This document shows, piece after piece, positions 14,254-57,735 of a stretch of 64,000 nt of DNA. Where the stretch lies: the IMG/VR virus record IMGVR_UViG_3300024308_000016, positions 208,394 to 272,393 of that record, one strand, 5' to 3'. The translations under genes were made by a program, and so were the position numbers. How positions within the stretch are numbered: position 1 is the first letter of the stretch; every line of letters begins with the position of its first letter. Below the pieces are notes generated by a model. That model saw only the letters and a program-made list of their open reading frames with translations, did no database searches and had not been told where the DNA came from.

Positions 14254-14273
14254 CACTTACACCTTACTTGAGG
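14254..14273 (+). promoter_or_regulatory. Conserved 20-bp motif, copy 1 (candidate phage promoter)
   Basis: CACTTACACCTTACTTGAGG; matches four other intergenic copies. Confidence 0.7.
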
Positions 14274-14315
14274 ACACAGCCCGTTGTTTCTTGTCTCAAG
14301 GAGGAGTATCATGGC

Positions 14316-14780
14316 CTGACGCATATTGAAACCATCTCACCAGCCCACGAAGAGCTGGCGTACTTATTAGCGAAGATTGACGTCTCGCAAATTCGGACGT
14401 ATAGCTCACTGGATAATACGTCGGCTACCACGGTCTACGGAAAAAACATAGAGACGCACACTACGTTCATTGGCGAGATCACCGCCGTGATCGGCAAGGG
14501 AAAGGCCGTGACTCGTAAAAAGGTCAGAGAAGCCGAGCATCTATACAACGACCGGGACTACTTCATCTCACAGGACGGATTCATCATTGATCGCCACTTT
14601 GCACTGGAGCGCTTGTTCCTGCGCATGCAGTTGCTGATCGATGCATACGCCCGGCTTTTGGCAAGTGCCGATGACTCCATCACCGCTACTCATAACAGGG
14701 AGCTGGTGGCGCCGATCATTGATAACTGCCTGAAGATGGTCAAATCTATCCAACTTAAACCAAATGGCACAAGCTACTGA
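14316..14780 (+). CDS. Hypothetical protein with probable non-ATG start (CTG 14316)
   Basis: Open frame downstream of a strong AAGGAGGAG SD; the only nearby ATG (14311) is out of frame and reads M-A-stop. Confidence 0.55.
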   Translation: MTHIETISPAHEELAYLLAKIDVSQIRTYSSLDNTSATTVYGKNIETHTTFIGEITAVIGKGKAVTRKKVREAEHLYNDRDYFISQDGFIIDRHFALERLFLRMQLLIDAYARLLASADDSITATHNRELVAPIIDNCLKMVKSIQLKPNGTSY

Positions 14781-15528
14781 TTTTCGTGATATCCGCACGG
14801 GAGAGCCGGATGCAGTGCTGGCTGGCATATGGCGCCAGATCATGCGCAACTACGGAATGGACTTTGCCCGCTTGGACGATCTGGTCACAGATTACTCCAA
14901 GATGATGACGTTCATGACGCCGGAGAAACAAAGCCAGTATCGTGGCAATGTTTTATCCGATCTCAAGAGCGAGAAGATGACCTGGGGGACCTTCCTTCGG
15001 GGTATCCGTTGCTTGAAGATGCAGAAGATGGATTTCATCCTTCACCTGCACCATTTGCAGTACATCACCGAGCATACGCTGGTCAAGGAGTTTGCGCCTC
15101 CTGAGGTGGACATCGACTTGCCGCTGCCTAATGGCGACAAGCCTCCCACCGAGCTGTACTACCTGTATACTTCGATCCGTCATGATCTTGGTATATCGGT
15201 GGCTGACACCCAGCAGCTGCTCACCAAGTACATGATCCGCTGTCAGATACCACTGACACACAAGAACAAGACCAGTGTCCGGGGAAACATCAAGAAGGAC
15301 TTATTTGGGGAACGCCTATCATGGGCCTCCCTGATACGAGGCTTGAACTTCCTGGAGATTGTCAAGTTCGATGTAGAGATCGTCCTGTATCCGAAGAAAG
15401 GCAAAAGCACCCGACATCGTCGCACTATCATTTTGAATGACCCGCACGATCTTAGGGAAGAGCTCGAAGCCATCAACGAGAGAAAGGACGCAAATGACAC
15501 TCAACTCAAACCAGCTACCCCTACTTGA
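14764..15528 (+). CDS. Hypothetical protein with two internal repeats (254 aa)
   Basis: RGNVLSDLKSEKMTWGTFLRGIRCL and RGNIKKDLFGERLSWASLIRGLNFL. Confidence 0.8.
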   Translation: MAQATDFRDIRTGEPDAVLAGIWRQIMRNYGMDFARLDDLVTDYSKMMTFMTPEKQSQYRGNVLSDLKSEKMTWGTFLRGIRCLKMQKMDFILHLHHLQYITEHTLVKEFAPPEVDIDLPLPNGDKPPTELYYLYTSIRHDLGISVADTQQLLTKYMIRCQIPLTHKNKTSVRGNIKKDLFGERLSWASLIRGLNFLEIVKFDVEIVLYPKKGKSTRHRRTIILNDPHDLREELEAINERKDANDTQLKPATPT

Positions 15529-16018
15529 CCGCGTCGTCAAGGAAGCCAACGATCTGATCTCGCAACATCTGAAGCTGATGATCTCGTTGAGCTCCACTGA
15601 GAACGATAAAGCTCTCAGCATTGTACGTATCTTGGTAAGCATGACCATAGAAACCGGACCGTCCATGTTCTTCAGTGAGCAAAACATCCGGGATCTGGAA
15701 GACCATGTCGACAAGAACATGGCTTTCCGGTCGCTTGTTGATAAAGTTGCAGGCCGTGTCTGCGACTTGTTGGTGTTCTCGGGGTCTTCGCACCGCGCGT
15801 TCTCCAACAGCATCATCGAGGGCTTCATAGCCAAGGAGCAGCCAGCGACAGAAAGCAGCTCCGGCACCTGGCCCGGTATGTTCCGTGATGACGAAGGGAA
15901 ATTCCTTTGTGCTCGTGAGAACTTCTGGATCATCTGCCTGTACATCGTTACCAGTACCTTTCACTACGCTAACTGGCACGACCAGTTCGACGTTTTGGAA
16001 ACACCGCCTTCTAATTGA
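15494..16018 (+). CDS. Hypothetical protein (174 aa)
   Basis: ATG 15494 after GAAAGGA. Confidence 0.7.
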   Translation: MTLNSNQLPLLDRVVKEANDLISQHLKLMISLSSTENDKALSIVRILVSMTIETGPSMFFSEQNIRDLEDHVDKNMAFRSLVDKVAGRVCDLLVFSGSSHRAFSNSIIEGFIAKEQPATESSSGTWPGMFRDDEGKFLCARENFWIICLYIVTSTFHYANWHDQFDVLETPPSN

Positions 16019-16030
16019 AAGACTCGACAA

Positions 16031-17593
16031 ATGGCACTCGCTGACAACATCTCTCGCCGCAACAAGAACAATGGCGCTCGCAAGAGCGAAGCGGCTGTGG
16101 AACGCCTGCTGGATCTGGACGCACGCAAGAGCCAGGGCATGTACCATGATGCATCGGCCGGCATCTATCGCCAAGCGCCTGCGTGGACATCAACTACGCC
16201 GCTGGATGAATCGATCCGTCATCTGAACATCAGCCTGAGCAGCCGCTCGGACCTGGGCAAGGCCCTGGATCCGGAGTTCAACCTGGAATGGGAGCACCCG
16301 GACTTTGGCCGTTTCATGAGCCTGAAGGCCTTTTGGCATTATGTGCTGGGCAGGGAAGCAGACAACCGCATTCGCATGCTTCGGTCCCGGGAACTGCGTG
16401 AGTTTGCGGCCAATCGGCGTGGCACGCTCGACCGCAACAAGATCCCCAACTTCCAGGCGCTGATCCTCAAGGCAGCCTACGACCGCATCACATCGCTGCC
16501 GGGGCTGTACAAGCTGGTCATGGACTCCAACCTCCCGTTTGAGAACTACATTCCTGGCACTCGGGACAGCGGCGCTCGCCGTGCCGATCATGCCAGTTGG
16601 TTTATTCCGGGCATGGAGATCATCCGCTTTGCACTGATCAAGGGCGAGCATCCGGACTTCACGGACTTCCTGAATTCCCAAGAGACCTACGATGACATCG
16701 TTCGTCAGCTCAAGAGCCGTGAAGTTGTGGATGTGCCCAAGGTCGCATCCATCCCCAACCTGTCGCAGTTCCTGAGCCACGGACCCGCGGCCAACGATCC
16801 CAAGGTCCCCAGGGCCAAGGGCGTCAAGGCCGCTCCTGCCCAAACCCCCAAGGCAAAGCCTACCCAGCCCAGGGCAGCCAAGCCAGCGGGCCCCATGTCC
16901 ACCCTGGCGGCCAAGGACGTGATGGACTGGGTCGATCGCGGCGGCTATATCGCAGGTCAAAAGCCCGACCCCAAAGCAGCCAAGTCTGCCGACAAGAAGG
17001 GACCCAAGCCCGCGCCTGTGAAAACCAAGGAAGACCGTATGGTCGAGATCAAGACCTACATCAACACCCTGGACGGCGCCTACCCGGTGGCCATCGTGAC
17101 GTTCGAAGAACGCGCACATGCCATCCGCTTCATCTTCGGGGCGATGGACAAGCTGGCCAAGGCCAACAGCAATGAGCTGGATGTGGATCTGGGCGGCGGA
17201 ACGCTGTACATGGGTGACGCCATGGAAGGTGTGCAAGCCAATGACGGCACCACCAAGGTCGTGATCTATGATCACAACGGCCAGACCAACCTCATGCGTC
17301 TGCAGGACGGCTCCTTCGACAACCCCTTCAATGACTCGATCCAGATCGGGCTGGAGTTGCCTGAAGGCGAGGACCTGCTGGACTATGTGGTCAATGAGTC
17401 GCGGTGCCCGGCTAGCTTCATCCATCACTGGCGTCGGCCCCAGTCCAGGAAGGAAGCAACGCTGATCGACGAGGAGAAATTCCGTCGTGAATGCCTGAAG
17501 ATCGCCCAAGAAGCGGGCGCGCCAGAAGCTGTGGCTGCGGTGCTGGATGTGGAACCTGTCAGCGAACCCACTGCTGAGCCTGCTGCCGAGTAA
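16031..17593 (+). CDS. Protein with N-terminal NADAR-like (T4 30.3/YbiA-like) domain, Pro/Lys/Ala-rich linker and unknown C-terminal domain
   Basis: HLNISLSSRSDLGKAL...HPDFGRFMSLKAFWHYV...NFQALILKA...SNLPFENY resembles the phage NADAR pattern (by eye). Confidence 0.55.
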   Translation: MALADNISRRNKNNGARKSEAAVERLLDLDARKSQGMYHDASAGIYRQAPAWTSTTPLDESIRHLNISLSSRSDLGKALDPEFNLEWEHPDFGRFMSLKAFWHYVLGREADNRIRMLRSRELREFAANRRGTLDRNKIPNFQALILKAAYDRITSLPGLYKLVMDSNLPFENYIPGTRDSGARRADHASWFIPGMEIIRFALIKGEHPDFTDFLNSQETYDDIVRQLKSREVVDVPKVASIPNLSQFLSHGPAANDPKVPRAKGVKAAPAQTPKAKPTQPRAAKPAGPMSTLAAKDVMDWVDRGGYIAGQKPDPKAAKSADKKGPKPAPVKTKEDRMVEIKTYINTLDGAYPVAIVTFEERAHAIRFIFGAMDKLAKANSNELDVDLGGGTLYMGDAMEGVQANDGTTKVVIYDHNGQTNLMRLQDGSFDNPFNDSIQIGLELPEGEDLLDYVVNESRCPASFIHHWRRPQSRKEATLIDEEKFRRECLKIAQEAGAPEAVAAVLDVEPVSEPTAEPAAE

Positions 17594-17609
17594 TCGGTAA
17601 CTACCACTT

Positions 17610-17656
17610 CCCCAGACGCCTTCGGGCGTCTGGGGGAGAGGCTCTCTTTTTTTTTT
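17610..17656 (+). terminator. Intrinsic terminator
   Basis: CCCCAGACGCC-TTCG-GGCGTCTGGGG followed by a long T tract. Confidence 0.85.
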
Positions 17657-17693
17657 GTCCCGATGCTATGACTTATTTGAATAGGAGTGTATA

Positions 17694-18746
17694 ATGATCC
17701 CAGCACAGCGGATGCAGTTTCTGGACAAAGAAACCAACGTCGGCTTGGTCGACCCTCTGAAGGTCAAAGCCAATGACATCCTGAACGTCGCAACCAACCA
17801 GCTCAACGAGATCACCTCGGGACTGGCGGACTTTATCAAGAACATCCAGCAGCAAGCATCAGCTCCGGCAGGTATGCTGCAAAGCCTGCTGGATCAAGGC
17901 ATACGCCTGACACGCGATGCCTTCAGTGCTATGAGCGACATCTCCAAGCTCAACCCCCGAGCCATCGAGTCAGCCATCGCATCCATGCTGCCAGGAAATG
18001 CAGCAGTGCAAAACGCCTTCAAGAACATCACTGCCCAGTGTCGCAACAAGGGTCTGGGAACCAACTCAGGCTTCAAGCCCTACAACGACTCGTTCGGCTG
18101 CGGCAAGGGCCAAGGCGCTTGCAACAGCTCTGAGGTACGGGGATTGCTCGACAAGATCACTGGGGGCGCGGCTTCTCAGTTCACCCGTTCCCTGAACTCC
18201 ATGCTCAAGAGTGTGTTGGCTCTTGGCCGAATGGGCTATGACGCAGGTCTGTGCAAGGTGTTCGGTGAACTCATCAAGGGCATGCCTGGTAACATCGTCC
18301 AGCGCGGCGCAGCTGGCTTGCTTGGCCTGATGGGCTCCAATGGCAATACCTCGGCTGTACTGGACATCACTGCCAACATGGGAAATGCCATCCCCAGCTT
18401 GGAGATCCCGGGACTGGTCGGCATCGCCATGAGCAACTTCACCACGCCCAAGAACTACAACCCCAACACCTTCTCGGATCTTGCCGACGGCTATATGACT
18501 GCGATGGATGGGATCCAGCCCGGCTGGAACAAGACAGCCGATGGCATGACCACCATGGCCAACGTAGGTGATACCCGCAGTGGCGACTTCATGAATGTGC
18601 TGGACAACGTGTGCTCGCGTACTCCGTTTGATCCGGACGATCTGACCGGTGTGGTGGGTGGTCCACTCGACGCCTTCACCGGTGCTTACAAGTCGGTCTC
18701 CTCTGTCAAAGGTCTGACCAGTGGTCTGAGCTCTTTGTTTGGCTAA
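17694..18746 (+). CDS. Putative virion structural protein (350 aa)
   Basis: AGGAG SD; Gly/Ala/Asn-rich with a small Cys cluster; adjacent to the tail module. Confidence 0.7.
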   Translation: MIPAQRMQFLDKETNVGLVDPLKVKANDILNVATNQLNEITSGLADFIKNIQQQASAPAGMLQSLLDQGIRLTRDAFSAMSDISKLNPRAIESAIASMLPGNAAVQNAFKNITAQCRNKGLGTNSGFKPYNDSFGCGKGQGACNSSEVRGLLDKITGGAASQFTRSLNSMLKSVLALGRMGYDAGLCKVFGELIKGMPGNIVQRGAAGLLGLMGSNGNTSAVLDITANMGNAIPSLEIPGLVGIAMSNFTTPKNYNPNTFSDLADGYMTAMDGIQPGWNKTADGMTTMANVGDTRSGDFMNVLDNVCSRTPFDPDDLTGVVGGPLDAFTGAYKSVSSVKGLTSGLSSLFG

Positions 18747-30553: not shown

Positions 30554-30570
30554 TCTTTGAGGATTTCACA

Positions 30571-38634: not shown

Positions 38635-38669
38635 TGGTATGTTCTATGCCGCACGTAAACAATTTCAGT

Positions 38670-38689: not shown

Positions 38690-38843
38690 ATGGCCACGAT
38701 CTTTTCGTAGCTGTCTCCATTCCCTCTTCCCGGAGTCCATAGAGACTCCCGTAATATAAACGAGATATCGCACCAGTGCAGGAATTCTCCTGGCTGGTTC
38801 CTCAGGTTTAACTGTCGTATACCCGGCAGAAAGGTTGGCTATT

Positions 38844-39425
38844 ATGTTCGTCGCTCCTAACACCTTCAAGCAAGCTGCATACAATGCGTTTGTTCCTGTC
38901 TTGATTGCGGACCATCTGTTCCGTACTTTGCTGATCGCCAGCTACCTGGCTGTGTGCCTGATGATCTCCTTCATCAAGGTCGATGGCTTGTTTCTTGTGA
39001 TCTACTCTTTGCTGTGCGCTGGCGTCTATGCGCTTACCTATGTGCACCTGGGCATCGCTAACCACCTGCGTTTGTATTTCGACCTCCAAGAGCTCGAACT
39101 CGCAGATGAGGTCAAGTACTGCCGAGAAGCCTACCGCGTCGTGGTGGGCCGCGTACACGCCTTGCTGCGTGTGTTCACGGTGATGGTACTGTTCACTTCT
39201 GGTATGACGGTGTTTTGCACGCTGGGCGCTGTGATGAAAGTCCACGACTCGCTGCTGAGCATCGCCATCGGTGGTAACTTGGTCAGTGCCGCCATCATGC
39301 TGGTGCTGGGTCTGACGGGTGCTTATAAGTACATGTCCACCAACTTCATCCAAGAACGTCTGGAGGACATCAGCTTCCCCCATATCCGCATCATGCTCAG
39401 CCGCGTCAAGCGCGAAGGCGTGTAA
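38844..39425 (+). CDS. Integral membrane protein (about 4 TM helices)
   Basis: Four hydrophobic segments; ATG 38844 after GAAAGG. Confidence 0.75.
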   Translation: MFVAPNTFKQAAYNAFVPVLIADHLFRTLLIASYLAVCLMISFIKVDGLFLVIYSLLCAGVYALTYVHLGIANHLRLYFDLQELELADEVKYCREAYRVVVGRVHALLRVFTVMVLFTSGMTVFCTLGAVMKVHDSLLSIAIGGNLVSAAIMLVLGLTGAYKYMSTNFIQERLEDISFPHIRIMLSRVKREGV

Positions 39426-39818: not shown

Positions 39819-39908
39819 AAAAGTGGTGGAAAAAATCTGGCTCTATCCCATCGCTGTGGGAGGATGAGCGAGATCGCGAAAGGATCCCCCTTTCTAAATT
39901 GGTCAAAG

Positions 39909-39928
39909 CACATATACTCTACTTGAGG
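39909..39928 (+). promoter_or_regulatory. Conserved 20-bp motif, copy 3
   Basis: CACATATACTCTACTTGAGG. Confidence 0.7.
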
Positions 39929-40048
39929 AGTGCGCGTTGACTTCTTTAGTTTCGCGAACGAACCTCCCCTATTGGCATACTTGCGTTTTGCGATTCGCCT
40001 TTAGCTTTTAGCTTTTTCCCTTTTCAACAAAGACTTTCTGGAGAGATC

Positions 40049-40510
40049 ATGTCCGATACCAAAACCCTGAGCGCCACTGCTGCCAAGGTTTCCGAAATGC
40101 TGGTCAACGATGCCGCGGCCCGCGATACCGTTTTCGAAAAGACCCTGCCCGAACACCTGAACATGGGCATCGTCGAAGAAGTCGCTCAACACCATGTCGA
40201 CGTGGCCGCGGGCACCGTCAATGCCGTCACCATCCTGGGCATCAAGGCAGCCAAGGAAAGCGGCGACAACAAGACCCAGACCTCGCTGCGCGTCAAGACC
40301 GGCAAGGGCAGCCACATCGACGCCACCTACACCCCCAAGAAGGAAGGCACCCTGCCGGCACGCAACGGCGGCGAACCCACGCACTACACCAGCTGGGGCG
40401 CTGTGAGCGTGGGCGTCAAGACCTCCATGGACTCCAAGGGCGGCCAGATGGGCACCGCGCTGGACCTGGCCAAGTCGATGACCGAAGAAGCGCTGGGCGG
40501 CACCAAGTAA
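40049..40510 (+). CDS. Probably abundant small protein (153 aa), possible HU-like fold
   Basis: GGAGAG SD, extreme codon bias, own motif and terminator; fold guess from the sequence pattern only. Confidence 0.8.
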   Translation: MSDTKTLSATAAKVSEMLVNDAAARDTVFEKTLPEHLNMGIVEEVAQHHVDVAAGTVNAVTILGIKAAKESGDNKTQTSLRVKTGKGSHIDATYTPKKEGTLPARNGGEPTHYTSWGAVSVGVKTSMDSKGGQMGTALDLAKSMTEEALGGTK

Positions 40511-49134: not shown

Positions 49135-49174
49135 GTGTATACCAGCGCTCCCGCGAGGGAGCGCTGGTATACAC
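49135..49174 (+). terminator. 18-bp perfect inverted repeat
   Basis: GTGTATACCAGCGCTCCC-GCGA-GGGAGCGCTGGTATACAC. Confidence 0.7.
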
Positions 49175-49195
49175 CCCTTTGTAAGCTTTTTTATC

Positions 49196-49215
49196 CACTT
49201 AGACCTTACTTGAGG
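49196..49215 (+). promoter_or_regulatory. Conserved 20-bp motif, copy 4
   Basis: CACTTAGACCTTACTTGAGG. Confidence 0.7.
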
Positions 49216-49248
49216 AATAGCCCTCTATTTTTCTATTTGGAGGATGAA

Positions 49249-49983
49249 ATGCCCAAACATCACGGATCCAAGCAGCAGCCCAAAACTGCTCAATCTCTCG
49301 ACGAGCTCGCTGCGCTGATGAAAGCCGCTGATGAAGCGGCCCAGGAAATCGGTGATCAAACCGAAACCACTGCTCGTGTGGAGCAGACTTACGTCCCAGC
49401 GCAAACTCATACCAAGGTCTCGCTCAACGGCGAGATGCTGTATACCTCGACCCGTCTGAACTATGACGGCTCCGAGCAAACGGATCAAGAGATCGAATCT
49501 CGATCGGTCCAAGCCAAAAGCCTGGGCGAGAAGTTCTTTGACAAGAACAATCCGTTCGATTCGTTCATCAAGGCAGTTCCGAAGCTGGAGCTGCCCGATG
49601 GCGAAGAGCCCGCACCACTGGCAGCGCTGCAGCAAATGCGCGACTGTGGCAAGGAGCTGACATTTGCTCGGCTGTCCACTCCCTGGGGCGCCACTAGTTT
49701 GGTGGACCGCGCCATGGTCGAGTCTCTCAAGCCTGGCGAGGTAGTATGGAGCTACCTGAAGGACGGCATCTCCGTCATCTACGTTCTCAAGGACAAGGCC
49801 ACTGACTCCAAAGACTACGCTGTGGTCCTGAAGGTGTACAAGACCAACTCCATGCAGTACGACACCTGGGTGTTCGGTGATCTTCGCCATATCACGGCGA
49901 TGAAAAACGACCACCTGCGCTACTACGAAAGCTTGCCCGAGCTCGATCCCAGCCTGTGGCAAAAGCTCAAGAACCTGTTCTAA
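49249..49983 (+). CDS. Hypothetical protein (244 aa)
   Basis: ATG 49249 after GGAGG; disordered N-terminus, globular C-terminus. Confidence 0.8.
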   Translation: MPKHHGSKQQPKTAQSLDELAALMKAADEAAQEIGDQTETTARVEQTYVPAQTHTKVSLNGEMLYTSTRLNYDGSEQTDQEIESRSVQAKSLGEKFFDKNNPFDSFIKAVPKLELPDGEEPAPLAALQQMRDCGKELTFARLSTPWGATSLVDRAMVESLKPGEVVWSYLKDGISVIYVLKDKATDSKDYAVVLKVYKTNSMQYDTWVFGDLRHITAMKNDHLRYYESLPELDPSLWQKLKNLF

Positions 49984-50048
49984 AAGCAGGCCGCAGATCG
50001 ATAAAGTGGTGAATCCTATCAATCTGCCTATTTCCCATAAGGAGACGT

Positions 50049-50558
50049 ATGTCCATCGCTGAACTGTTGGCCGCCAATGACGAGCAGGCCAAACAAACCA
50101 TGAACCTGTACCATGGCTCGGGCTTCAAGCAAACGGAGCTCAAGCCCGGCTTTGCCCATACAGGGGAGCTGGTCAACTGGGACAGGTACGAGTCCAATGA
50201 CTATTTGTACGCAAGCAGTCACAAAAACTCAGCGATCCTACTGGGCATCGTCTCCGCATGGGAAAAGAAGTTCCCTATTTCCCGAACCAAGATCGACGAG
50301 CCGGGTCGCCAGATCCGCTTGGAGTTCGAGGACAAGGTGCCCAGTCCGGACGATCTCAATCGGGTCGATGCCTGGCTGTATACCATCGCTCGTGATGACG
50401 CAGCCGACGGCTGGGTCCACAACCACAACCCTTTCAACAACATCAAGACGGAGTACAAGACCAAAAGTACCATCAAGAAAAACATCCTCAGCATCGAGAA
50501 GATCAATATCGAGTCCACCTTAAAAGGATTCGTGATCCATTCCAGCGTCGCAAAGTAA
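50049..50558 (+). CDS. Putative ADP-ribosyltransferase-fold (Arr-like) protein
   Basis: AAGGAG SD; LYHGS...LKPG...YLYASS...A...WLYTI...EYKT order of ART core motifs (by eye). Confidence 0.45.
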   Translation: MSIAELLAANDEQAKQTMNLYHGSGFKQTELKPGFAHTGELVNWDRYESNDYLYASSHKNSAILLGIVSAWEKKFPISRTKIDEPGRQIRLEFEDKVPSPDDLNRVDAWLYTIARDDAADGWVHNHNPFNNIKTEYKTKSTIKKNILSIEKINIESTLKGFVIHSSVAK

Positions 50559-50597
50559 ACCCCGGTTCCCCTTCTCTTTATATAGAAAGCATTTGAA

Positions 50598-52049
50598 ATG
50601 ACAGCATCGAACAACGCAGCCGACAACAATAACAACGCATCCGCTGGCGGTGGCAGCCTGAGCGATTTCCGATCCTCCATGCTCAGCAAGCTGGGTGTGA
50701 CGGCTGCTCCGAAGTACGAACGTCGTGGCCCCAACCAGCATGAAATGCTGGACGACACGATCCGTGAGCTCAATGGCGAATTTCGTGCCAAGATGGCCCG
50801 CGTACTGGAAGACTCCGGCGTCTTCACCCGCGTCACCTATCCCGAGGGGCTCAATGCCCGTGAAGTGGCCGCTGATGTCAGCTTCGAATCCCGCATCGCC
50901 TCCATCAAGGGCTTCCAATCGGTGCGCGACTTCATGATCTTCTACCCCCGTATCCAGGGCGACATCGAAGACATCATCAAGTGCAACGCCATGCTCGATG
51001 GCCTGAGCCCGGTGATCGGCCGCACCAATGGCCTGAGCAAGTCCATGACGCTCAAGGACCAGACCTCCATCAACGAGCTGGTGCTCGATCTGCATGAAGC
51101 TGGCTTCTACGGCGTGCACGACAGCGACGACGTGATGGCGTTCGATGAAAAGAACATCCCCACGTTCCGTGCCGGCATCTCGTTCACTCGCAAGGGCAAC
51201 CTGGGCACTCAGTCCATGGAAGTGTCCGTGCGCTGGGCGGCCAACAACGAGCTGGTGGAAAAGTTCATCCGCATCGTCCGCAACCACGTGGCCGTCTCCG
51301 GTGCCATTGACGCTGGCGTTTACGACACCATCATCGGCATCACCGGCGGCAAGATGGACATCAAGAGCGAGTCCCTGCAGGACTCCCAGGAAGCGGTGCC
51401 TGCGTTCTACCCCTGGATGAACGAGACGGACATCGCCCAGTACTTCCTGGACTTCCTGAACTCTTCGGCCAACGTGCTGATCCTGTACGGCCCTCCCGGC
51501 ACCGGCAAGACCACCATGATCCGTACGGCCGTCAAGCGCCTGGGCCTTCGCGCTCTGGGCACTGCTGATCAGACCCTGATGAGCATGCCTGGCTTCGTGC
51601 AGATCTGCGGCACCCACATGTCGGGCGGCGGCGAAAACGGCAAGTACGATGTGCTGGTGGCCGAGGACTCGGAAATCCTCACCAAGAAGCGCCTCAACGA
51701 AGAAGGCCAGGTGGTCAACCCGGTGATGGCATCGCTGCTCAATGCGGTCGACGGCGTCTCCAAGGAAACCAGCTTCAAGCTGGTGATCACCACCAACCTT
51801 CCCAACCTGCTGGACATGGACACGGCACTACTGCGCCCTGGCCGCTGCTTCGACGTGATGGAATTCGGCCGCCTGACGGCTGAGCAAGGCATGACCATCC
51901 GCGCCATGCTGGGCAAGGAAAACAAGCGCCTGGCAAGCCCGAACGGCTACCTGCTGGCCGAGATCCTGAACATGGACACCACCAAGAGCGAACTGATCGA
52001 CGGTCACGCCATCGTCTCGCCCCGCTTCCCGCTGCCCAAGAAGAAGTAA
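50598..52049 (+). CDS. AAA+ ATPase paralogue 1 (BCS1-like C-terminal domain)
   Basis: GPPGTGKT, DVLVAEDSE, ITTN, DTALLRPGRCFD. Confidence 0.9.
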   Translation: MTASNNAADNNNNASAGGGSLSDFRSSMLSKLGVTAAPKYERRGPNQHEMLDDTIRELNGEFRAKMARVLEDSGVFTRVTYPEGLNAREVAADVSFESRIASIKGFQSVRDFMIFYPRIQGDIEDIIKCNAMLDGLSPVIGRTNGLSKSMTLKDQTSINELVLDLHEAGFYGVHDSDDVMAFDEKNIPTFRAGISFTRKGNLGTQSMEVSVRWAANNELVEKFIRIVRNHVAVSGAIDAGVYDTIIGITGGKMDIKSESLQDSQEAVPAFYPWMNETDIAQYFLDFLNSSANVLILYGPPGTGKTTMIRTAVKRLGLRALGTADQTLMSMPGFVQICGTHMSGGGENGKYDVLVAEDSEILTKKRLNEEGQVVNPVMASLLNAVDGVSKETSFKLVITTNLPNLLDMDTALLRPGRCFDVMEFGRLTAEQGMTIRAMLGKENKRLASPNGYLLAEILNMDTTKSELIDGHAIVSPRFPLPKKK

Positions 52050-52066
52050 GTTCTTCTATCCCTCCA

Positions 52067-52103
52067 CTTCCTGCGGCCCTTCGGGGCTGCGGGAAGGTCT
52101 TTT
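52067..52103 (+). terminator. Intrinsic terminator between AAA paralogues 1 and 2
   Basis: CTTCCTGCGGCCC-TTCG-GGGCTGCGGGAAG then TCTTTTGT. Confidence 0.7.
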
Positions 52104-52143
52104 GTCAGTTTCCCTTTTAAATAGTAAGCATTAGGAGCTACCC

Positions 52144-53805
52144 ATGTCCGAGAACAACAACCCCGAATCCACCAACCCCGCGTCCGAGCAACCCGCTCCC
52201 ATCATCGCCACTCCCGTCTACGAACAAACCGAAGTGACCATGGGCGCGGACGGCGAAGGCGCCACTGAATCTGCTGGTGAAGAAGCTGGTGAAGCGGCTG
52301 AAGCTGTCGCCTCAGCCTCTCCCTCTGTCGAGATGCTGAATCTTGAGCTTCCTGACCTCACCACCAAGAGTTTCGTGAAACGCATGATGGGCAACTCCAT
52401 GGTCGGCTTGATGTCGTCCTCCATGCTGGAGGCGTTGCGGTCCCAGTCGCCGGTGGCCGCTCGCGTGGCCTCCCGCAACCGTGTCAAGTCGGTGCGCCAG
52501 GCATTCGAGGAAGCCGTGGAAACGGTCGACAAGGTGCACTACTGCCGCGCCCGCTTCAAGCACACCATGGACTACATGGCGATCACGAACCCGAGTGGGA
52601 TCATGGATCTGGGCGAGTTCTACGACAAGAAGGGCAAGTACCAAGAGCGCCTGATGCTCGCCCGTGCTCGGGAAGTGGGCTTTGCCTCCATCCATCGCGC
52701 CATCTCCTTCACTGAGAGCTTCGGTATGCTGGAGAAGATCTGCGACCAGATGTCGATGTACGATGGCGCGGGTAAGACGTTCGATCGTCGCCTGGGCATG
52801 AACCAGATCCACCTAAAGCCCAATGCTCGTATCGAGATCGTGCAAGCGTTCATCGACGAAGGCTGGGTCTTTGTGGGTGGTGACACCATCTGCAAGTTTG
52901 ACGAAAAGAACCGTCCCATCGGCGGCATCAACTTCGACTGGCATGGCGGCTCTGAAGGTGGCGAATGCTACTCCAACACCCCGACGGTCTGGGGTATCGG
53001 TGAAAACCACATGCCTCGCCTGATCGAGCTGTTCCGTGAACGCCTGGCAGAGCGCACTCTGGGCACGGCCAAGCTGACCACCATCCAGGCCATCAACCCG
53101 ATGAGCGGTCTGGAGACAGTGGATGACGATCTGTCCGACGTGCGTCTGGCCGACTCCACGTTCTTCCCCTGGATGAACGGCACGCCGATCACCGAGTACT
53201 TCATGGACTTCCTGACCAGCGACGCCAACGTCCTGATCCTGTACGGCCCTCCGGGCACGGCAAAGTCGACCATGATCCGTACCGCGGTCAAGCAGCTGGG
53301 TCTGCGTGCCCTGGGCACGTCCAACCAAAAGCTGATCGGAAACCCGCAGTTCCTGACTGCATGCGGCTCTCGCATGTCCGGCCGTGGCGGCGACGCTCCG
53401 TACGACGTGCTGATCGCTGAAGACGCGGAAATCCTGGTGCGCAGCCGCGACCTGGGCAACCCGCTGATGTCCACGCTGCTGGACGTCACCAACGGCATGA
53501 GCGCCAAGCACTCGTTCAAGTTGATCCTGACCATGAACTCGGACAACCTCAACGACGTGGACACGGCGCTGCTGCGCCCTGGCCGGTGCTTCGACATCAT
53601 GCACTTCGGCTACCTGGACGCCAAGCAAGCAGCCAACGTGCGCACCGCACTGAAGCTGCCTGAGGTGCCGATCAAGGAAGGCAAGTACGTGCTGGCTGAA
53701 GTCGTCAACATGGGCATCATCAAGACCGACCTGATCGAAGGCAAGGCCATCGTCAAGCCGCGTTTCCCGCTGCCCAACGATCGCGTGATCGATCGTTCGC
53801 TGTAA
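52144..53805 (+). CDS. AAA+ ATPase paralogue 2
   Basis: GPPGTAKS, DVLIAEDAE, DTALLRPGRCFD; acidic disordered N-terminus. Confidence 0.9.
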   Translation: MSENNNPESTNPASEQPAPIIATPVYEQTEVTMGADGEGATESAGEEAGEAAEAVASASPSVEMLNLELPDLTTKSFVKRMMGNSMVGLMSSSMLEALRSQSPVAARVASRNRVKSVRQAFEEAVETVDKVHYCRARFKHTMDYMAITNPSGIMDLGEFYDKKGKYQERLMLARAREVGFASIHRAISFTESFGMLEKICDQMSMYDGAGKTFDRRLGMNQIHLKPNARIEIVQAFIDEGWVFVGGDTICKFDEKNRPIGGINFDWHGGSEGGECYSNTPTVWGIGENHMPRLIELFRERLAERTLGTAKLTTIQAINPMSGLETVDDDLSDVRLADSTFFPWMNGTPITEYFMDFLTSDANVLILYGPPGTAKSTMIRTAVKQLGLRALGTSNQKLIGNPQFLTACGSRMSGRGGDAPYDVLIAEDAEILVRSRDLGNPLMSTLLDVTNGMSAKHSFKLILTMNSDNLNDVDTALLRPGRCFDIMHFGYLDAKQAANVRTALKLPEVPIKEGKYVLAEVVNMGIIKTDLIEGKAIVKPRFPLPNDRVIDRSL

Positions 53806-53812
53806 AGCGCTA

Positions 53813-53841
53813 CTCCACGGGCCCTTTACGGGCCCGTGGAG
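53813..53841 (+). terminator. Hairpin between AAA paralogues 2 and 3
   Basis: CTCCACGGGCCC-TTTAC-GGGCCCGTGGAG. Confidence 0.65.
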
Positions 53842-53896
53842 GTGTTTGCATTTTCAATAATCAGTATTCTCTCCCTTCTCTATTAGAAAGCGTCAC

Positions 53897-55309
53897 ATGT
53901 CCGCAGTTCCTACCCCTGAAAACTTCGCAACTACCCTGCTGAGCGCCGCCGCTACTGCCATCCGCCAGCGCCAAAGCGCCGCCGGCAGCCGCATCCTGAA
54001 CCGCTCCAAGCCCAGGACGGTGGTCGAACGCTTCGACTACACCGTTGATGTGGCCATGAAGAAGGCCGGTGCCTTCGAGGACATCCCCCAGCCTCCCCAC
54101 CACGACCGCGGCGACTCCGTCACGTCGGTGGTCCTGAACCGCGATTTCTACTGCGGCGAAGGCCGCCTGCTGATGGACTCCTTCATCAGCCAGGTGATCG
54201 CCGCTGATGGCTTCCGTAGCTCTCTGGACCTCATGGTCATGGACCTGGGCTACGGCGGCATGCTGGACATCGCTCGCGCCAACATGCAGACCTACTACGA
54301 CCAGCTGCCCGTGAAGGGGGGCTTCTGTGCCGGCAACATGTACGTCAAGGAAGGCGGTGAGCGCGCTCTGTTTGAAGCCTTCGTCAAGCGTGGCTGGCGC
54401 ATCATGAACCATGATCACCTGGTGCTGCTGGATCATCGCAACCTCCCGATCGCTGGCGTGGACCTGGACCTGTGCCGTGACCGTCACCACGACGTGTACA
54501 TGGACGACATCCAGTTCTTCGGTCTGAGCACCGCTGTGCTCGACGAGATCACGGGCATCCTGCGCTCGGTGCTGGCGGACCGCATGATGGGCAACGCCTC
54601 CATGACCACGATCCAGTCCATCGACAAGCGCGGCGAGATGCAGACGTCCACGGATGACATGTCCGAAGGCCTGACGGCTACGAGCGCCTTCTATCCCCAG
54701 ATGGAGGGCGCCTCGATCCGTGAGTACTTCATGGACTTCTTCAACTCCAAGGCGTCGGTGCTGGTCCTGTACGGCCCTCCCGGCACTGCTAAGTCGACCA
54801 TGATTCGCACAGCCATCATCGAGCTGGGCCTGCGTGCACTGGGCACTTCCAACCCCAGCGTGTACGCCAGTCCCAATTTCATCTCGGTGTGCGGCTCCCG
54901 TATGGCGGGCGCCAACGGTGAGACGCCCTTCGACGTGCTGATCACGGAAGATGCGGAAGCTCTGGTGGCTCCTCGCTCGGCAGGCAACGCCAAGATGGCT
55001 GAGCTGCTCGATGCCACCGACGGCATCGGCACTCAGCACAAGTTCAAGATGATCATCACTTTGAACTCGCGCGATCTGTCGAACGTGGACACAGCACTGC
55101 TGCGCCCTGGCCGTTGCTTCGACATCATGGAGTTCGGCCATCTCACGGCCGAAGAAGCCATGGTGGTGCGGCGCACTCTGGATCTGCCCGAGATCGCCAT
55201 CAAGCCCGGCAAGTACCTGCTGGCCGAGGTGGTGAACATGGACGACACCAAGAGCGAGACCATCGACGGCCATGCCATCGTGACTCCGCGCTTCAAGCTC
55301 AAGAAGTAA
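53897..55309 (+). CDS. AAA+ ATPase paralogue 3
   Basis: GPPGTAKS, DVLITEDAE, DTALLRPGRCFD. Confidence 0.9.
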   Translation: MSAVPTPENFATTLLSAAATAIRQRQSAAGSRILNRSKPRTVVERFDYTVDVAMKKAGAFEDIPQPPHHDRGDSVTSVVLNRDFYCGEGRLLMDSFISQVIAADGFRSSLDLMVMDLGYGGMLDIARANMQTYYDQLPVKGGFCAGNMYVKEGGERALFEAFVKRGWRIMNHDHLVLLDHRNLPIAGVDLDLCRDRHHDVYMDDIQFFGLSTAVLDEITGILRSVLADRMMGNASMTTIQSIDKRGEMQTSTDDMSEGLTATSAFYPQMEGASIREYFMDFFNSKASVLVLYGPPGTAKSTMIRTAIIELGLRALGTSNPSVYASPNFISVCGSRMAGANGETPFDVLITEDAEALVAPRSAGNAKMAELLDATDGIGTQHKFKMIITLNSRDLSNVDTALLRPGRCFDIMEFGHLTAEEAMVVRRTLDLPEIAIKPGKYLLAEVVNMDDTKSETIDGHAIVTPRFKLKK

Positions 55310-55332
55310 GCCGCGTCCCGTGGTAAAACAGT

Positions 55333-55370
55333 AAGAGGAGCCGGCATCTGCTGGCTCCTCTTATTTTTTT
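55333..55370 (+). terminator. Intrinsic terminator
   Basis: AAGAGGAGCCGGC-ATCT-GCTGGCTCCTCTT then a T tract. Confidence 0.8.
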
Positions 55371-55393
55371 GTCTCTATTGAAAGGATATCATC

Positions 55394-56176
55394 GTGAACA
55401 AGAACCAAGTAACCGCTATCGGGCGTTTCATCCAAGGCAGACTTCAGTTTTCGGAACTGCTCAACACAGCAGCTCGATTCATAGAAGCACAGAGCTGGAT
55501 CAACCAGTCCGGCGAGCTGGACAAGGGTATTGGCAAGCGCCGCACCAGCATGGCTGTCGCTGACTTGTTGAAAGCCACGCATCAGCCCCTGAATGTACAG
55601 GAGGTGCTGATCAACTATTACGCTGACCTGATAGTCACCTCCATCAACCTGGACATCGCGGCTAAGGAGCTGCAAATCACTGTCATCTTGTCTGACACCT
55701 CTGTCAGTGCCAAGGTGTCCCAGCAATACGTGTTGACCGTCACCGCGGGTACTTCGGCTGCTCAGCCCGATCCCGTTGCAATGGATCCCGCGGACTGGGC
55801 GCAGCATCCAGCCAATCGCGCAGATGCCCCGAAGAAGTCGCCAGCTCCCATTGCTCCTCCCGAAGCCGCTAAAAAGGCAGTCCAGGCCAAGGCACAGGTT
55901 ACGCTCCCTGTGGAGCAGCCTCCCCAGTTCCTGTATGCCGCCAAGGACAAGGTGCGCCAGTTGAGCACCCTGAATATGGCGCGTGTGCAGCCCTTCATCG
56001 AAGCAGCGAACTTTCCGATCGGCTACAAAGTGCATCGTGTCGTCTCCATCGATGGCCCGCTCAATGAAGGCATCGCTCGCATCGACGTGATCTCCACGTG
56101 GACAGGTCCCGGAAAAGGCCACCATTCCGAGATCCTTACTCCGCTGTACCTGAGCCAGCACCGCTTCTCCAAGTAA
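55394..56176 (+). CDS. Hypothetical two-domain protein with Pro/Ala/Lys linker (260 aa)
   Basis: GTG start after AAAGGA. Confidence 0.75.
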   Translation: MNKNQVTAIGRFIQGRLQFSELLNTAARFIEAQSWINQSGELDKGIGKRRTSMAVADLLKATHQPLNVQEVLINYYADLIVTSINLDIAAKELQITVILSDTSVSAKVSQQYVLTVTAGTSAAQPDPVAMDPADWAQHPANRADAPKKSPAPIAPPEAAKKAVQAKAQVTLPVEQPPQFLYAAKDKVRQLSTLNMARVQPFIEAANFPIGYKVHRVVSIDGPLNEGIARIDVISTWTGPGKGHHSEILTPLYLSQHRFSK

Positions 56177-56200
56177 CTGCTCCTTCTAAGGACCCCTAAA

Positions 56201-56554
56201 ATGAAAGCTACCGCATCCGCTTACTGCCGCATCGGCGTCTCCATCAACACCCTGCAAGAACTCACTGAAGCACTGACGGCTATTTCACAAGGGCGTAGTG
56301 ACCTGGAGATGGCCCGAGCTGTGGCCCATGCCGAGACGCTCGTGTATCGCCGCCTGGCTGATGTGCGCAAGGCGGGTGCGCGTATCATGCCGTTTCAGTC
56401 CCTGATCCCCAAAGAAGTGGTCTTCAGCATCGTGGAACAGGGGCCCAATTCGTTGCATTTCAAGATGGACAAGCACATGCGTACTTCCAGCAAGGGACAA
56501 GAGTCCCAGGAATCGATGTACAGCTTCGACATCATCATTACCCATCCCAACTAA
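56201..56554 (+). CDS. Hypothetical protein (117 aa)
   Basis: AAGGA SD. Confidence 0.75.
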   Translation: MKATASAYCRIGVSINTLQELTEALTAISQGRSDLEMARAVAHAETLVYRRLADVRKAGARIMPFQSLIPKEVVFSIVEQGPNSLHFKMDKHMRTSSKGQESQESMYSFDIIITHPN

Positions 56555-56568
56555 AGAAAGCTTTCACC

Positions 56569-57639
56569 ATGGCTACTGCCAAGAAAACCGCCACCAAGAC
56601 TGAGATAGTCAACTCAGCACTCAAGCGTGCCTCGGTCCGCAAAGCGACAGCCTCCAAGGAACTCAAAGCACATCTGGACAAGGCCGACGAGCTGGCAGTT
56701 CCCTCCACAGTACCTGTCATGCAAGACGCCAAAGCCGTGGCTGACGAGGCTTCGCTCGTGACCAGCCTGAACCTGCTGCTCGCCGGCAAAGCCACCCGGC
56801 GCCTCAAAGATGAGGCCCGCCTGATGTGGCAGTTGCGCGAAGTGCTCAAGAGCACCCAGACTCAGCTGCAAGGCACACTGATCAATGGCGGCGTCTCGGA
56901 CGCTACAGGTGCCCTGACCATGGAGGCGTATCGCAACGTCATGGAACTGCTGGGCTTGAAAGAGCTGGCCAAGGTCCCAAATCCGGGCCCTGAAGTGCGT
57001 TCGACTCGCTCCATGCGCCGCGCTTACACGCGTGGTCTGGTGCAAGTCCTGCAAAAGGGTATCAATGCCATCGACGAGTCGGTGCGCACCATCGGTGCCT
57101 ACAAGCAAGCTGGCGTCAAGACCCGCAAGAATCGGGCAGTTTCGGTGGACATCCCCCGCACTCCCATCGTGGAGACGCTCACGGTGCAGCGCATGCGTGG
57201 GCGCTCGGTCACGCATCACAACAGCCATCTGTTCGTCACCGCGGGCTACATCTGCCTGGCGGTCGATCACATCGCCAAGATCGTGATGGAGTCCAAGTCT
57301 CTTAACGAGATGACCAAGGCTGTACGTGACCGCACTGCCAGCTCCCGCCAGCGGCTGCTGCCCTTCCTGGCCAAGGAAGTGCCGGTCACCATCACCGAGG
57401 ACAACATCTTCATCCAGTCGGCCACTGGCTTCATCGACGGCCACTACGAAGTCGAAGTGCTGGTGCGCTATCCCCTGGGCCTGGGCGCTGAAGCCATCCA
57501 GGGCCTCAAACTGAAGGTGTACCGCGACAAGTCCATCGGTGCCTATGACCGCGTGATGCAGCACACCAGTGGCGTTACCAACATGGGTCGTGAAGACATC
57601 ACAGCTTTGGTGCAGCACGCTCATCGCCAACTGGGTTGA
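56569..57639 (+). CDS. Hypothetical basic protein (356 aa)
   Basis: Lys/Arg/Ala-rich N-terminus; strong codon bias. Confidence 0.8.
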   Translation: MATAKKTATKTEIVNSALKRASVRKATASKELKAHLDKADELAVPSTVPVMQDAKAVADEASLVTSLNLLLAGKATRRLKDEARLMWQLREVLKSTQTQLQGTLINGGVSDATGALTMEAYRNVMELLGLKELAKVPNPGPEVRSTRSMRRAYTRGLVQVLQKGINAIDESVRTIGAYKQAGVKTRKNRAVSVDIPRTPIVETLTVQRMRGRSVTHHNSHLFVTAGYICLAVDHIAKIVMESKSLNEMTKAVRDRTASSRQRLLPFLAKEVPVTITEDNIFIQSATGFIDGHYEVEVLVRYPLGLGAEAIQGLKLKVYRDKSIGAYDRVMQHTSGVTNMGREDITALVQHAHRQLG

Positions 57640-57642
57640 TAG

Positions 57643-57692
57643 CTCCCACCCCCGGCGCCTGCGGGCGTCGGGAGTGCGGTGCTTTCTTTTTG
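57643..57692 (+). terminator. Intrinsic terminator
   Basis: Imperfect GC-rich hairpin followed by TTTCTTTTT. Confidence 0.6.
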
Positions 57693-57715
57693 TCCCGTAT
57701 CTAGAAACTTTCAGT

Positions 57716-57735
57716 CACGTATACTCTACCTGAGG
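57716..57735 (+). promoter_or_regulatory. Conserved 20-bp motif, copy 5
   Basis: CACGTATACTCTACCTGAGG; shares upstream TTTCAGT with copy 2. Confidence 0.7.

What the first reader, a model, noticed from the sequence alone, without database searches (positions are those of the whole stretch)
14254..57735. Five copies of a 20-bp motif CACNTANACYYTACYTGAGG head every non-structural + strand unit
Seen: identically spaced copies at 14254, 38670, 39909, 49196 and 57716, all intergenic and on the + strand. Three lie just downstream of a terminator hairpin, and none precedes a virion or RNAP gene. A degenerate copy may exist at 63963 (GACGTGTGTATTACCTGAGT). It has 15 invariant positions and does not resemble a sigma70 -35/-10 promoter. 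Known: phiKZ-like virion RNAPs use short phage-specific early promoters (TATATTAC in phiKZ). Inference: an unusually long, lineage-specific early promoter or operator defining this phage's early regulon.
Basis: partly seen in the sequence, partly recalled or inferred. Interest (0 to 1): 0.72.

Follow-up and report, generated by a model that had tools for sequence, protein, structure and literature searches.

The report
Early promoter of a jumbo phage
The repeated 20-bp motif is real and is almost certainly the early-gene promoter read by the RNA polymerase that this uncultivated phiKZ-like giant phage injects with its DNA; this kind of signal is expected in such phages, but here it is long, two-part and conserved across a whole clade.

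Summary
They belong to a set of 24 copies in the 272-kb phage genome. All 24 are on the + strand, intergenic and upstream of + strand genes. Each has a second conserved block (TTTGTA) 12 nt upstream, so the element is two-part and about 40 bp long.

Motif-headed units encode small proteins of unknown function, the nuclear-shell protein chimallin, non-virion RNA polymerase (nvRNAP) subunits and DNA polymerase. Virion RNA polymerase (vRNAP), capsid, tail and terminase genes lack the motif. The same element sits at orthologous positions in nine related metagenomic phages (43–52% GC, proteins 40–60% identical) while the flanking DNA has diverged to random.

Corrections:
- The motif does not head every non-structural + strand unit.
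- It does precede RNAP genes elsewhere in the genome (the non-virion set).
- The copy proposed at 63963 is background.
- The geometry is bacterial-like if transcription starts at the G of TTGAGG.

No transcription start could be measured. This is a new member of a known kind, of moderate interest.

The parts
14233..14273 (+). Promoter copy 1: upstream block TTTTGA (14236-14241), 12-nt spacer, core CACTTACACCTTACTTGAGG (14254-14273); predicted start near G 14270
   Evidence: (51.3 bits); orthologous copies in G001 at 8829 and in L052
38649..38689 (+). Promoter copy 2: upstream block CACGTA (38652-38657, degenerate), core CACATATACCTTACCTGAGG (38670-38689); predicted start near G 38686
   Evidence: (54.7 bits); G001 has a copy at the same place, just after the head-protease gene
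39888..39928 (+). Promoter copy 3: upstream block TTTCTA (39891-39896), core CACATATACTCTACTTGAGG (39909-39928); predicted start near G 39925
   Evidence: (47.7 bits); orthologous G001 copy at 38443
49175..49215 (+). Promoter copy 4: upstream block TTTGTA (49178-49183), core CACTTAGACCTTACTTGAGG (49196-49215); predicted start near G 49212
   Evidence: (60.7 bits); G001 copy at 47846 just after the orthologous 566-aa virion protein gene, with 12 further conserved leader bases
57695..57735 (+). Promoter copy 5: upstream block TATCTA (57698-57703), core CACGTATACTCTACCTGAGG (57716-57735); predicted start near G 57732; shares an about 95-nt promoter-plus-leader cassette with the copy at genome 96620
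   Evidence: (61.4 bits)
38597..38638 (+). GC-rich stem-loop (dG -34.9 kcal/mol) closing the preceding virion-gene unit, 31 nt before core 2
   Evidence: not called a canonical terminator because it has no T-run
49135..49174 (+). GC-rich stem-loop (dG -36.9), directly abutting the TTTGTA block of copy 4
57647..57676 (+). GC-rich stem-loop (dG -21.5) followed by a T-rich tail, 39 nt before core 5
39835..39874 (+). Weaker stem-loop (dG -19.0) before copy 3
14270..18746 (+). Predicted early unit 1: five + strand genes of unknown function, ending before the - strand virion genes
38686..39425 (+). Predicted early unit 2: one 193-aa gene with no family match
39925..40510 (+). Predicted early unit 3: one 153-aa gene with no family match
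49212..57639 (+). Predicted early unit 4: eight genes, including three paralogous ATPase-like genes (50598-55309)
57732..59231 (+). Predicted early unit 5: two genes with no family match, ending before the - strand terminase gene
28533..35265 (+). Context without the motif: vRNAP genes (phiKZ gp178 homologue and a probable gp180 homologue), interrupted by two group I introns
   Evidence: PMC10612078

Best explanation
The motif is the core of a two-part promoter of about 40 bp, cc-TTT(G/C)TA-N12-CAC(W)TA(Y)AC(YY)TAC(Y)TGAGG. It drives the early genes of an uncultivated phiKZ-like (chimallivirus-type) jumbo phage.

Proposed mechanism:
1. The multisubunit vRNAP is packaged in the capsid and injected with the DNA.
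2. It recognises these 24 sites and starts transcription at or next to the G of TTGAGG. That placement puts TAnACy at about -12 to -7 and TTTGTA at about -34 to -29.
3. It transcribes rightward operons that are insulated from each other by GC-rich stem-loops.
4. The early transcripts encode host-takeover proteins, the nuclear shell, DNA polymerase genes and the second, non-virion RNAP (nvRNAP). The nvRNAP then transcribes the motif-less middle and late genes, including the vRNAP and virion genes.

Shown: the existence, number, orientation and placement of the element, its gene content and its clade-wide conservation.
Inferred: that it is a promoter, that the vRNAP reads it, that it acts early, and the exact start site.
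Weaker secondary inference: the transcribed TTGAGG pairs with the leader to form a hairpin at the 5' end of the mRNA.
For: 1. Not chance. There are 24 copies at 35-67 bits, the next-best site scores 13.8 and shuffled genomes reach at most 11. All are on the + strand (P about 1e-7). All lie in the 13% of the genome that is intergenic (P about 1e-21).
2. Each copy heads a + strand gene, most often 29-90 nt downstream by my gene calls; longer gaps hold likely uncalled starts. The one apparent exception, at 180607, has an uncalled 164-aa ORF with a ribosome-binding site.
3. Gene content fits the phiKZ programme.
   - Copies directly precede chimallin (genome 34115; PHROG nuclear shell protein, and Pfam Chimallin in relatives).
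   - Copies directly precede the nvRNAP genes: genome 36653 matches phiKZ gp055 and 201phi2-1 gp107, and genome 124526-128760 matches gp071 and gp129.
   - Copies also head units that contain DNA polymerase genes.
   - The vRNAP genes (gp149 and gp178 homologues, and a probable gp180 homologue), major capsid, protease, sheath, terminase, internal head and fibre genes have none.
   - In phiKZ, Gp55 is an early product and the vRNAP subunits are middle products (PMC10612078). PHIKZ054 has an early-promoter start site (PMC8244752).
4. Bootstrapping logic. The nvRNAP genes carry the motif, so an enzyme already present at injection must read it.
5. Phylogenetic footprint. G001 has 43% median protein identity and 47% GC, yet has about 24 copies, all on the + strand, including 11 at orthologous positions. 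The core matches at 10-19 of 20 bases while the flanks match at about 25-30%. Seven further relatives carry the element before chimallin and before the nvRNAP gene, and an eighth (L052) at the orthologous 14254 unit.
6. Literature. A conserved motif marks early operons in every RNAP-encoding jumbo phage and is the vRNAP promoter where tested. The start site lies 6 nt downstream of the element (AR9: ...TATTAT-(6N)-G+1). phiKZ has an extended -10 box plus an upstream T-rich block (PMC7598289, PMC5312081, PMC8244752).
7. Complementarity between TTGAGG and the leader begins at the TT of TTGAGG in 17/24 copies here and 15/22 in G001, and it changes to match when the motif deviates.
Against: - No transcript 5' end was observed. 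The only RNA-library data are sparse low-depth contigs, two of which run across a copy from upstream. They are uninformative, and DNA carry-over is not excluded.
- The element is not AT-rich over its length, unlike the described vRNAP promoters.
- The 5'-hairpin enrichment is modest: 19 observed against 13.5 expected, and 16 against 11.
- Virion packaging of the vRNAP is inferred from homology only.
- Several non-structural + strand units lack the motif, so it does not define all non-late transcription.
Confidence: 0.85

Rival explanations
1. It is an early promoter read by the host sigma70 RNA polymerase, as in T4, rather than by the phage's vRNAP.
For: With +1 at the G of TTGAGG, the geometry is bacterial: TTTGTA at -34 to -29, a 16-bp spacer and TAYACY at -12 to -7. 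The sub-variant TATACT matches TATAAT at 5 of 6 positions.
Against: - The sigma70 consensus scanner calls none of the copies examined.
- About half of the copies have C at the critical -7 position and C, A or G at -10.
- The strongest conservation (CAC, TAC, TTGAG) lies outside the sigma70 hexamers.
- The element is identical in phages of 43-56% GC, which probably have different hosts.
- The phage carries a full vRNAP gene set, and phiKZ-type infection is independent of host RNAP (PMC7598289, PMC10612078).
Confidence: 0.06
2. It is a promoter for a phage enzyme made after infection: the nvRNAP in a middle class, a phage sigma-like factor, or a single-subunit RNAP.
For: Long, highly conserved phage-specific promoters are typical of T7-like RNAPs. 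Some motif-headed units carry replication genes that are 'middle' in other phages.
Against: - The nvRNAP genes are themselves headed by the motif, so the nvRNAP cannot be the first enzyme to read it.
- The genome has no sigma70 r2 or r4 domain, and the positive controls rang.
- No T7-like RNAP domain was found, although that control was silent.
Confidence: 0.04
3. It is not a promoter. It is instead a binding site (operator) for a regulatory protein, or an RNA-level signal such as a processing site or leader element in longer transcripts.
For: The 3' part (TTGAGG) appears to be used in RNA pairing with the leader.
Against: - The motif has no dyad symmetry.
- It is strictly oriented with the downstream genes, and it sits just after strong stem-loops that would end upstream transcripts.
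- A fixed-distance upstream block would have no role in an RNA element.
- Without it, no other promoter candidate exists for 24 operons, including chimallin and the nvRNAP genes.
Confidence: 0.04

Closest known systems
phiKZ early promoters read by the vRNAP (28-32 sites; also 201phi2-1)
   Same: A highly conserved motif at the head of early, mostly rightward operons. It has an extended -10-like core plus a T-rich block further upstream, it drives PHIKZ054 (chimallin, by my own knowledge) and the early nvRNAP genes, and it is absent from virion genes. The number of sites is similar (PMC8244752, PMC10914365, PMC11512511).
   Different: The sequence differs: the phiKZ motif is AT-rich, whereas here the core is CACWTAYACYYTACYTGAGG with G/C at fixed positions. 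The conserved stretch runs through the predicted start site. The genome is 56% GC.
AR9 early promoter AAATATATATTAT-(6N)-G+1
   Same: A long, nearly invariant element with a conserved G start 6 nt downstream. It was found bioinformatically first and then confirmed (33 of 34 predictions). The enzyme is very sensitive to single changes (PMC5312081).
   Different: AR9 is a uracil-DNA Bacillus phage and its motif is purely A/T. The start site here is only predicted.
Ralstonia phage RP12, sequence upstream of its chimallin gene
   Same: TACATATTACTATCTTGGAG lies about 100 nt before the chimallin gene and matches this core at 12 of 20 positions (ACATAT..CTTG..G).
   Different: It falls below the PWM threshold, no TTTGTA block is evident, and only one site was examined.
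Bacterial sigma70 promoters
   Same: Two blocks with a 16-bp spacer; T and A are invariant at the predicted -12 and -11.
   Different: It fails the consensus test. Conservation extends to -16/-14, -4/-3 and -1 to +4. The phage has no sigma gene.
T7-type single-subunit RNAP promoters
   Same: About 20 bp, nearly invariant, phage-specific, and overlapping the start site.
   Different: No such polymerase gene was detected (weak test). The element is two-part with a distal block. The phage has multisubunit RNAPs.
Promoter-plus-stem-loop cassettes of T4-type phages (recalled from memory, not checked here)
   Same: A stem-loop followed by an early promoter forms a repeated intergenic module. Some modules here share about 95 nt of promoter plus leader in front of unrelated genes.
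   Different: Those cassettes use host sigma70 promoters. A role in gene shuffling was not tested here.

Membership tests
vRNAP-dependent early promoters of phiKZ-like jumbo phages | The phage encodes two multisubunit RNAP sets, virion and non-virion | tested here: met
   vRNAP homologues: phiKZ gp149 and gp178, plus a probable gp180 homologue annotated as virion-associated beta' in phage OBP (window 12268-12927, 28533-35265). nvRNAP homologues: gp055 and gp071 / 201phi2-1 gp107 and gp129 (genome 36653; 124526-128760).; PMC10612078, PMC11512511.
vRNAP-dependent early promoters of phiKZ-like jumbo phages | An over-represented conserved motif lies upstream of, and co-oriented with, presumed early operons | tested here: met
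   24 of 24 copies are intergenic, on the + strand and ahead of + strand genes, with a clear score gap to background.
vRNAP-dependent early promoters of phiKZ-like jumbo phages | It heads early genes (nvRNAP subunits, nuclear shell) and is absent from virion and vRNAP genes | tested here: met
   Temporal class is inferred from phiKZ (PMC10612078, PMC8244752).
vRNAP-dependent early promoters of phiKZ-like jumbo phages | An AT-rich element of about 10 nt centred near -10, with a conserved start about 6 nt downstream | tested here: inconclusive
   The core contains WTAYAC, and a conserved G lies 6 nt after TAnACy. However, the element is not AT-rich throughout and the start site was not measured (leader-pairing boundary).
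vRNAP-dependent early promoters of phiKZ-like jumbo phages | Transcription starts within minutes of infection and resists rifampicin and chloramphenicol | not testable with these tools
   The phage is uncultivated. Public RNA-library contigs were uninformative.
vRNAP-dependent early promoters of phiKZ-like jumbo phages | Promoter positions are conserved relative to homologous genes in related phages | tested here: met
   11 orthologous positions in G001. Seven further relatives carry it before chimallin and before the nvRNAP gene, and one more (L052) at the 14254 unit. The most distant relative has only a diverged version.
Bacterial sigma70 promoters | Match to TTGACA-N16-18-TATAAT (at least 9 of 12, with A at position 2 and T at position 6 of the -10 hexamer) | tested here: not met
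   The scanner reports no site at 38670, 39909 or 49196. The -7 position is C in about half of the copies.
Promoters of phage-encoded sigma factors | The phage encodes a sigma70-family protein | tested here: not met
   No Sigma70_r2 or r4 domain in any frame, and controls rang in 10 and 14 of 14 genomes. A non-homologous specificity subunit is not excluded.
T7-type single-subunit RNAP promoters | The phage encodes a T7-like RNAP (Pfam PF00940) | tested here: inconclusive
   No match, but the control genomes contain none either, so the search's sensitivity is unproven.

The most novel reading that the evidence does not exclude
The sigma-less vRNAP of this clade reads a promoter with full bacterial geometry: a -35-like TTTGTA, a 16-bp spacer, a -10-like TAnACy, and an invariant block from -4 to +4. 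This would imply an unrecognised virion-packaged specificity subunit or domain that does the job of sigma regions 2 and 4. In addition, the invariant transcribed TTGAGG would be kept because every early mRNA begins with a 5'-terminal hairpin that shields it from host 5'-end-dependent decay during takeover.
Probability: 0.25. Interest if true: 0.6.

Novelty: new member of a known kind. Interest (0 to 1): 0.4.

Why it matters
- It gives a ready-made map of the early regulon (24 units) of an uncultivated, widely distributed chimallivirus lineage. It shows which of the genes of unknown function are candidates for host takeover.
- The element is long and is kept across phages of 43-56% GC. That makes it a well-defined substrate for studying how a vRNAP with no known sigma factor finds promoters, which is still unsolved for phiKZ-type vRNAPs.
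- It is also a compact orthogonal promoter candidate for synthetic biology.
- The kind of element is what the field expects in any phage with two multisubunit RNAPs, so the result is not surprising.

Tried and rejected
1. Direct transcript evidence. Two run searches found RNA-type libraries holding parts of the phage. Laying four of them on the chimallin/nvRNAP stretch gave only a few contigs at depth 2-11. Two of them cross a motif copy from about 170-200 nt upstream. No start sites can be read, and DNA carry-over is possible.
2. The copy at 63963 is rejected: 6 mismatches, -4.6 bits, no upstream block and no gene downstream on the contig.
3. The weak site at genome 47492 (13.8 bits) was not pursued, because it is barely above the maximum seen in shuffles.
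4. An exact-pattern scan of IMG/VR gave 5 stretches on 4 contigs. Only one contig (G001) is a true relative and the other three look like chance matches. A protein-based IMG/VR scan found only G001 again.
5. De novo search for a second (middle or late) promoter upstream of 142 motif-less genes found only T-runs, stem-loop words and a ribosome-binding-site-like word. This agrees with the literature, which says such promoters are not predictable.
6. I considered that TTTGTA might simply be the U-tract of the preceding terminator. I rejected this because copies without a hairpin keep the block at the same 12-nt distance.
7. Searching the 182-kb relative behind L042 as a whole record was not possible.
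8. A megablast search against known phages found nothing. The nearest cultured phages are only about 31-42% identical in RNAP proteins.
Full report
WHAT THE SEQUENCE IS. The window is the last 64 kb of a single 272,393-bp virus contig of 55.9% GC, which CheckV rates as 100% complete. It has no nucleotide-level relative among 50,697 deposited phage genomes. Its proteins place it among phiKZ-like jumbo phages with multisubunit RNA polymerases. The best RNAP matches are Ralstonia, Xanthomonas and Klebsiella jumbo phages at about 31-42% identity. Near-identical DNA occurs in subsurface, wastewater and animal-gut sequencing runs.

THE OBSERVATION. The five exact matches are at the stated coordinates on the + strand. 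None is expected by chance, and no further site appears with up to three mismatches. Scanning the whole genome changes the picture. There are 24 clear copies, all on the + strand, and 17 of them lie in the left 125 kb. Aligning them shows a second conserved block, TTTGTA preceded by C-rich bases, exactly 12 nt upstream of the core. A 62-nt position weight matrix (PWM) separates the 24 copies (35-67 bits) from everything else. The next site scores 13.8 bits, and shuffled genomes reach at most 11. The proposed degenerate copy at 63963 scores -4.6 bits and lacks the upstream block, so I reject it.

PLACEMENT. I built a codon-usage gene model with 287 genes, 245 of them on the + strand, leaving 13.3% of the genome intergenic. 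All 24 copies are intergenic (P about 1e-21). All are on one strand (P about 1e-7). All lie ahead of a + strand gene, most often 29-90 nt before the called start codon. The one apparent exception, at genome 180607, is followed by an uncalled 164-aa ORF with a ribosome-binding site. About 15 copies sit 17-40 nt after a strong GC-rich stem-loop of dG -19 to -37 kcal/mol. In the window these are the copies at 38670, 49196 and 57716. Most of these hairpins lack a T-run, and the consensus scanner does not call them canonical terminators. Copies without a hairpin keep TTTGTA at the same distance, so that block belongs to the element and not to the terminator.

WHICH GENES CARRY THE MOTIF. Motif-headed units mostly encode small proteins with no family match. 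They also include:
- the nuclear-shell protein chimallin, at genome 34115 and directly after a copy;
- an RNAP subunit at genome 36653, also directly after a copy;
- two adjacent RNAP subunits plus a helicase at genome 124526-131180, directly after a copy;
- two DNA polymerase genes.
PhiPA3's cross-referenced annotation identifies these RNAP genes as homologues of phiKZ gp055 and gp071 and of 201phi2-1 gp107 and gp129. These are nvRNAP subunits (PMC11512511).

WHICH GENES LACK THE MOTIF. The RNAP genes in the window (12268-12927 and 28533-35265) have no copy. They are homologues of phiKZ gp149 and gp178, and of a gene annotated as virion-associated beta' in phage OBP. In phiKZ, Gp178, Gp180, Gp149 and Gp80 form the vRNAP and are made from middle genes, whereas Gp55 is an early product (PMC10612078). 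Also motif-less are the major capsid protein, head protease, tail sheath, terminase, internal head proteins, fibres and all - strand genes. Genome-wide the motif marks the non-virion set and avoids the virion set, which is the pattern an early promoter should show. The title claim fails, because + strand units with SbcC-like, RNase H and UvsX-like genes (window 750-13772) have no copy. These are probably middle genes.

CONSERVATION IN RELATIVES. One IMG/VR contig, G001 (168 kb, 46.7% GC), is syntenic with this phage but shares only 43% median protein identity. It has about 24 copies, all on its + strand, and the control pattern gave 0 forward and 2 reverse matches. Eleven of its copies lie at orthologous positions. 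These include before chimallin, before both nvRNAP units, after the head protease gene and after a 566-aa virion protein gene. At these positions the core matches at 10-19 of 20 bases and the upstream block at 4-10 of 11, while the flanking DNA matches at about 25-30%. Seven further metagenomic relatives (nvRNAP subunit 56-84% identical, 43-52% GC) carry the element upstream of chimallin and upstream of the nvRNAP gene. An eighth (L052, 77% identical in the first-gene product) carries it at the orthologous 14254 unit. A relative at 40% identity has only a diverged version, and RP12 has a 12-of-20 match at the same place. Over 63 sites in 10 phages the near-invariant bases are TTTnTA upstream and T5, A6, A8, C9, A13, C14, T16, G17 and A18 of the core.

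HOW IT MOST LIKELY WORKS. The review literature states that a conserved motif can be found upstream of early operons in every RNAP-encoding jumbo phage. Wherever transcripts were profiled, that motif proved to be the early promoter used by the injected vRNAP (PMC7598289). In AR9, 33 of 34 predicted sites were confirmed. The AR9 consensus is followed by a conserved G start after 6 nt, and phiKZ and phiR1-37 also start 6 nt downstream of their elements (PMC5312081). phiKZ early promoters combine an extended -10 box with a T-rich block further upstream, and one of them drives PHIKZ054 (PMC8244752). Here the nvRNAP genes are themselves motif-headed, so an enzyme present at injection must read the element. 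Applying the 6-nt rule puts +1 at the G of TTGAGG. That places TAnACy at -12 to -7 and TTTGTA at -34 to -29.

An independent hint supports that start site. The leaders contain a complement to TTGAGG more often than shuffled leaders do (19/24 against 13.5 expected here, and 16/24 against 11 in G001). The complement changes to match when the motif deviates. The helix begins at the TT of TTGAGG in 17/24 copies here and 15/22 in G001. This suggests that transcripts begin there with a 5' hairpin. The statistics are modest, and I treat this as a secondary inference.

RIVAL EXPLANATIONS.
- Host sigma70 polymerase is suggested by the geometry. Against it, the scanner calls no copy, half the copies have C at the critical -7 position, and the strongest conservation lies outside the hexamers. 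The element is also unchanged across phages of very different GC content.
- A phage sigma factor is unsupported, because no sigma70 domain was found and the positive controls worked.
- A T7-like polymerase was not found, but that search had no positive control.
- An operator or a purely RNA-level element does not explain the strict orientation, the position after stem-loops or the fixed-distance upstream block.

WHAT IS MISSING. No transcription start was measured. The RNA-library contigs that hold this phage are too sparse to use and may derive from DNA.

VERDICT. The interpretation as a lineage-specific early promoter is well supported by placement, gene content, logic and conservation. It is a new member of a known kind, distinguished by its length, its G/C-containing invariant positions, its clade-wide stability and its bacterial-like spacing.

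Noticed in passing
window 14298-14330 (also G001 8869-8891 and L052 about 1310-1335): The leader of the 14254 unit has a strong ribosome-binding site followed by ATG, one sense codon and a stop (ATG-GCC-TGA). This mini-ORF is in the +1 frame relative to a long open frame that has no canonical start nearby. Two relatives keep the same architecture with different codons (ATG-AAG-TAA and ATG-CGT-TAG). This looks like a conserved two-codon mini-ORF, perhaps with re-initiation at a nearby in-frame ATT. It recalls the lambda bar minigenes (from memory). The mechanism is unknown.
   Followed up: partly
window 30043-30331 and 33810-34091: Two full-length group I introns (Rfam RF00028, 58 and 65 bits) sit between and inside the vRNAP genes. 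This explains why the gp178-like gene appears as two ORFs with a 303-nt gap. PhiPA3 and phiKZ carry an endonuclease gene (gp179) at the corresponding place.
   Followed up: partly
genome-wide, e.g. window 57770-57782; genome 96660-96683: An RBS-like word, ATAGAAAG or AGGAAAG, lies 5-10 nt before many start codons, in both early leaders and motif-less genes (13 of 142 upstream regions against about 1 expected). It may reflect the 3' end of the unknown host's 16S rRNA.
   Followed up: partly
genome 96590-96683, 112150-112242; window 57686-57782: Some copies share an about 95-nt promoter-plus-leader cassette (80% identity) in front of genes that are not paralogous. This suggests cassette duplication or gene conversion.
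   Followed up: partly
all 24 copies: The core has two linked sub-variants: CACTTACAC(C/T)TTAC in 11 copies and CAC(A/T/G)TATACTCTAC in 8. Positions 4 and 7 co-vary. Most relatives use the second type. These may be strength or timing sub-classes.
   Followed up: partly
window 50598-55309: Three tandem paralogous genes (38-49% identical, PHROG 14322, with weak ATPase-like matches) lie inside early unit 4.
   Followed up: no
window 63990-64000 and genome 1-40: Both contig ends carry poly-G runs, which are probably a sequencing or assembly artefact. The true genome ends or junction are therefore uncertain.
   Followed up: no
window 14268-14780: The public gene call for this ORF (170 aa) starts at the TTG inside the promoter core, and in relative L052 at an ATG upstream of the promoter. 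N-terminal conservation begins only about 15 codons after the mini-ORF, so both calls are probably too long.
   Followed up: partly
L050 (Ralstonia phage RP12) 1155-1174: RP12 has TACATATTACTATCTTGGAG about 100 nt upstream of its chimallin gene. It is a likely early promoter related to both the phiKZ TATATTAC type and the element described here.
   Followed up: no
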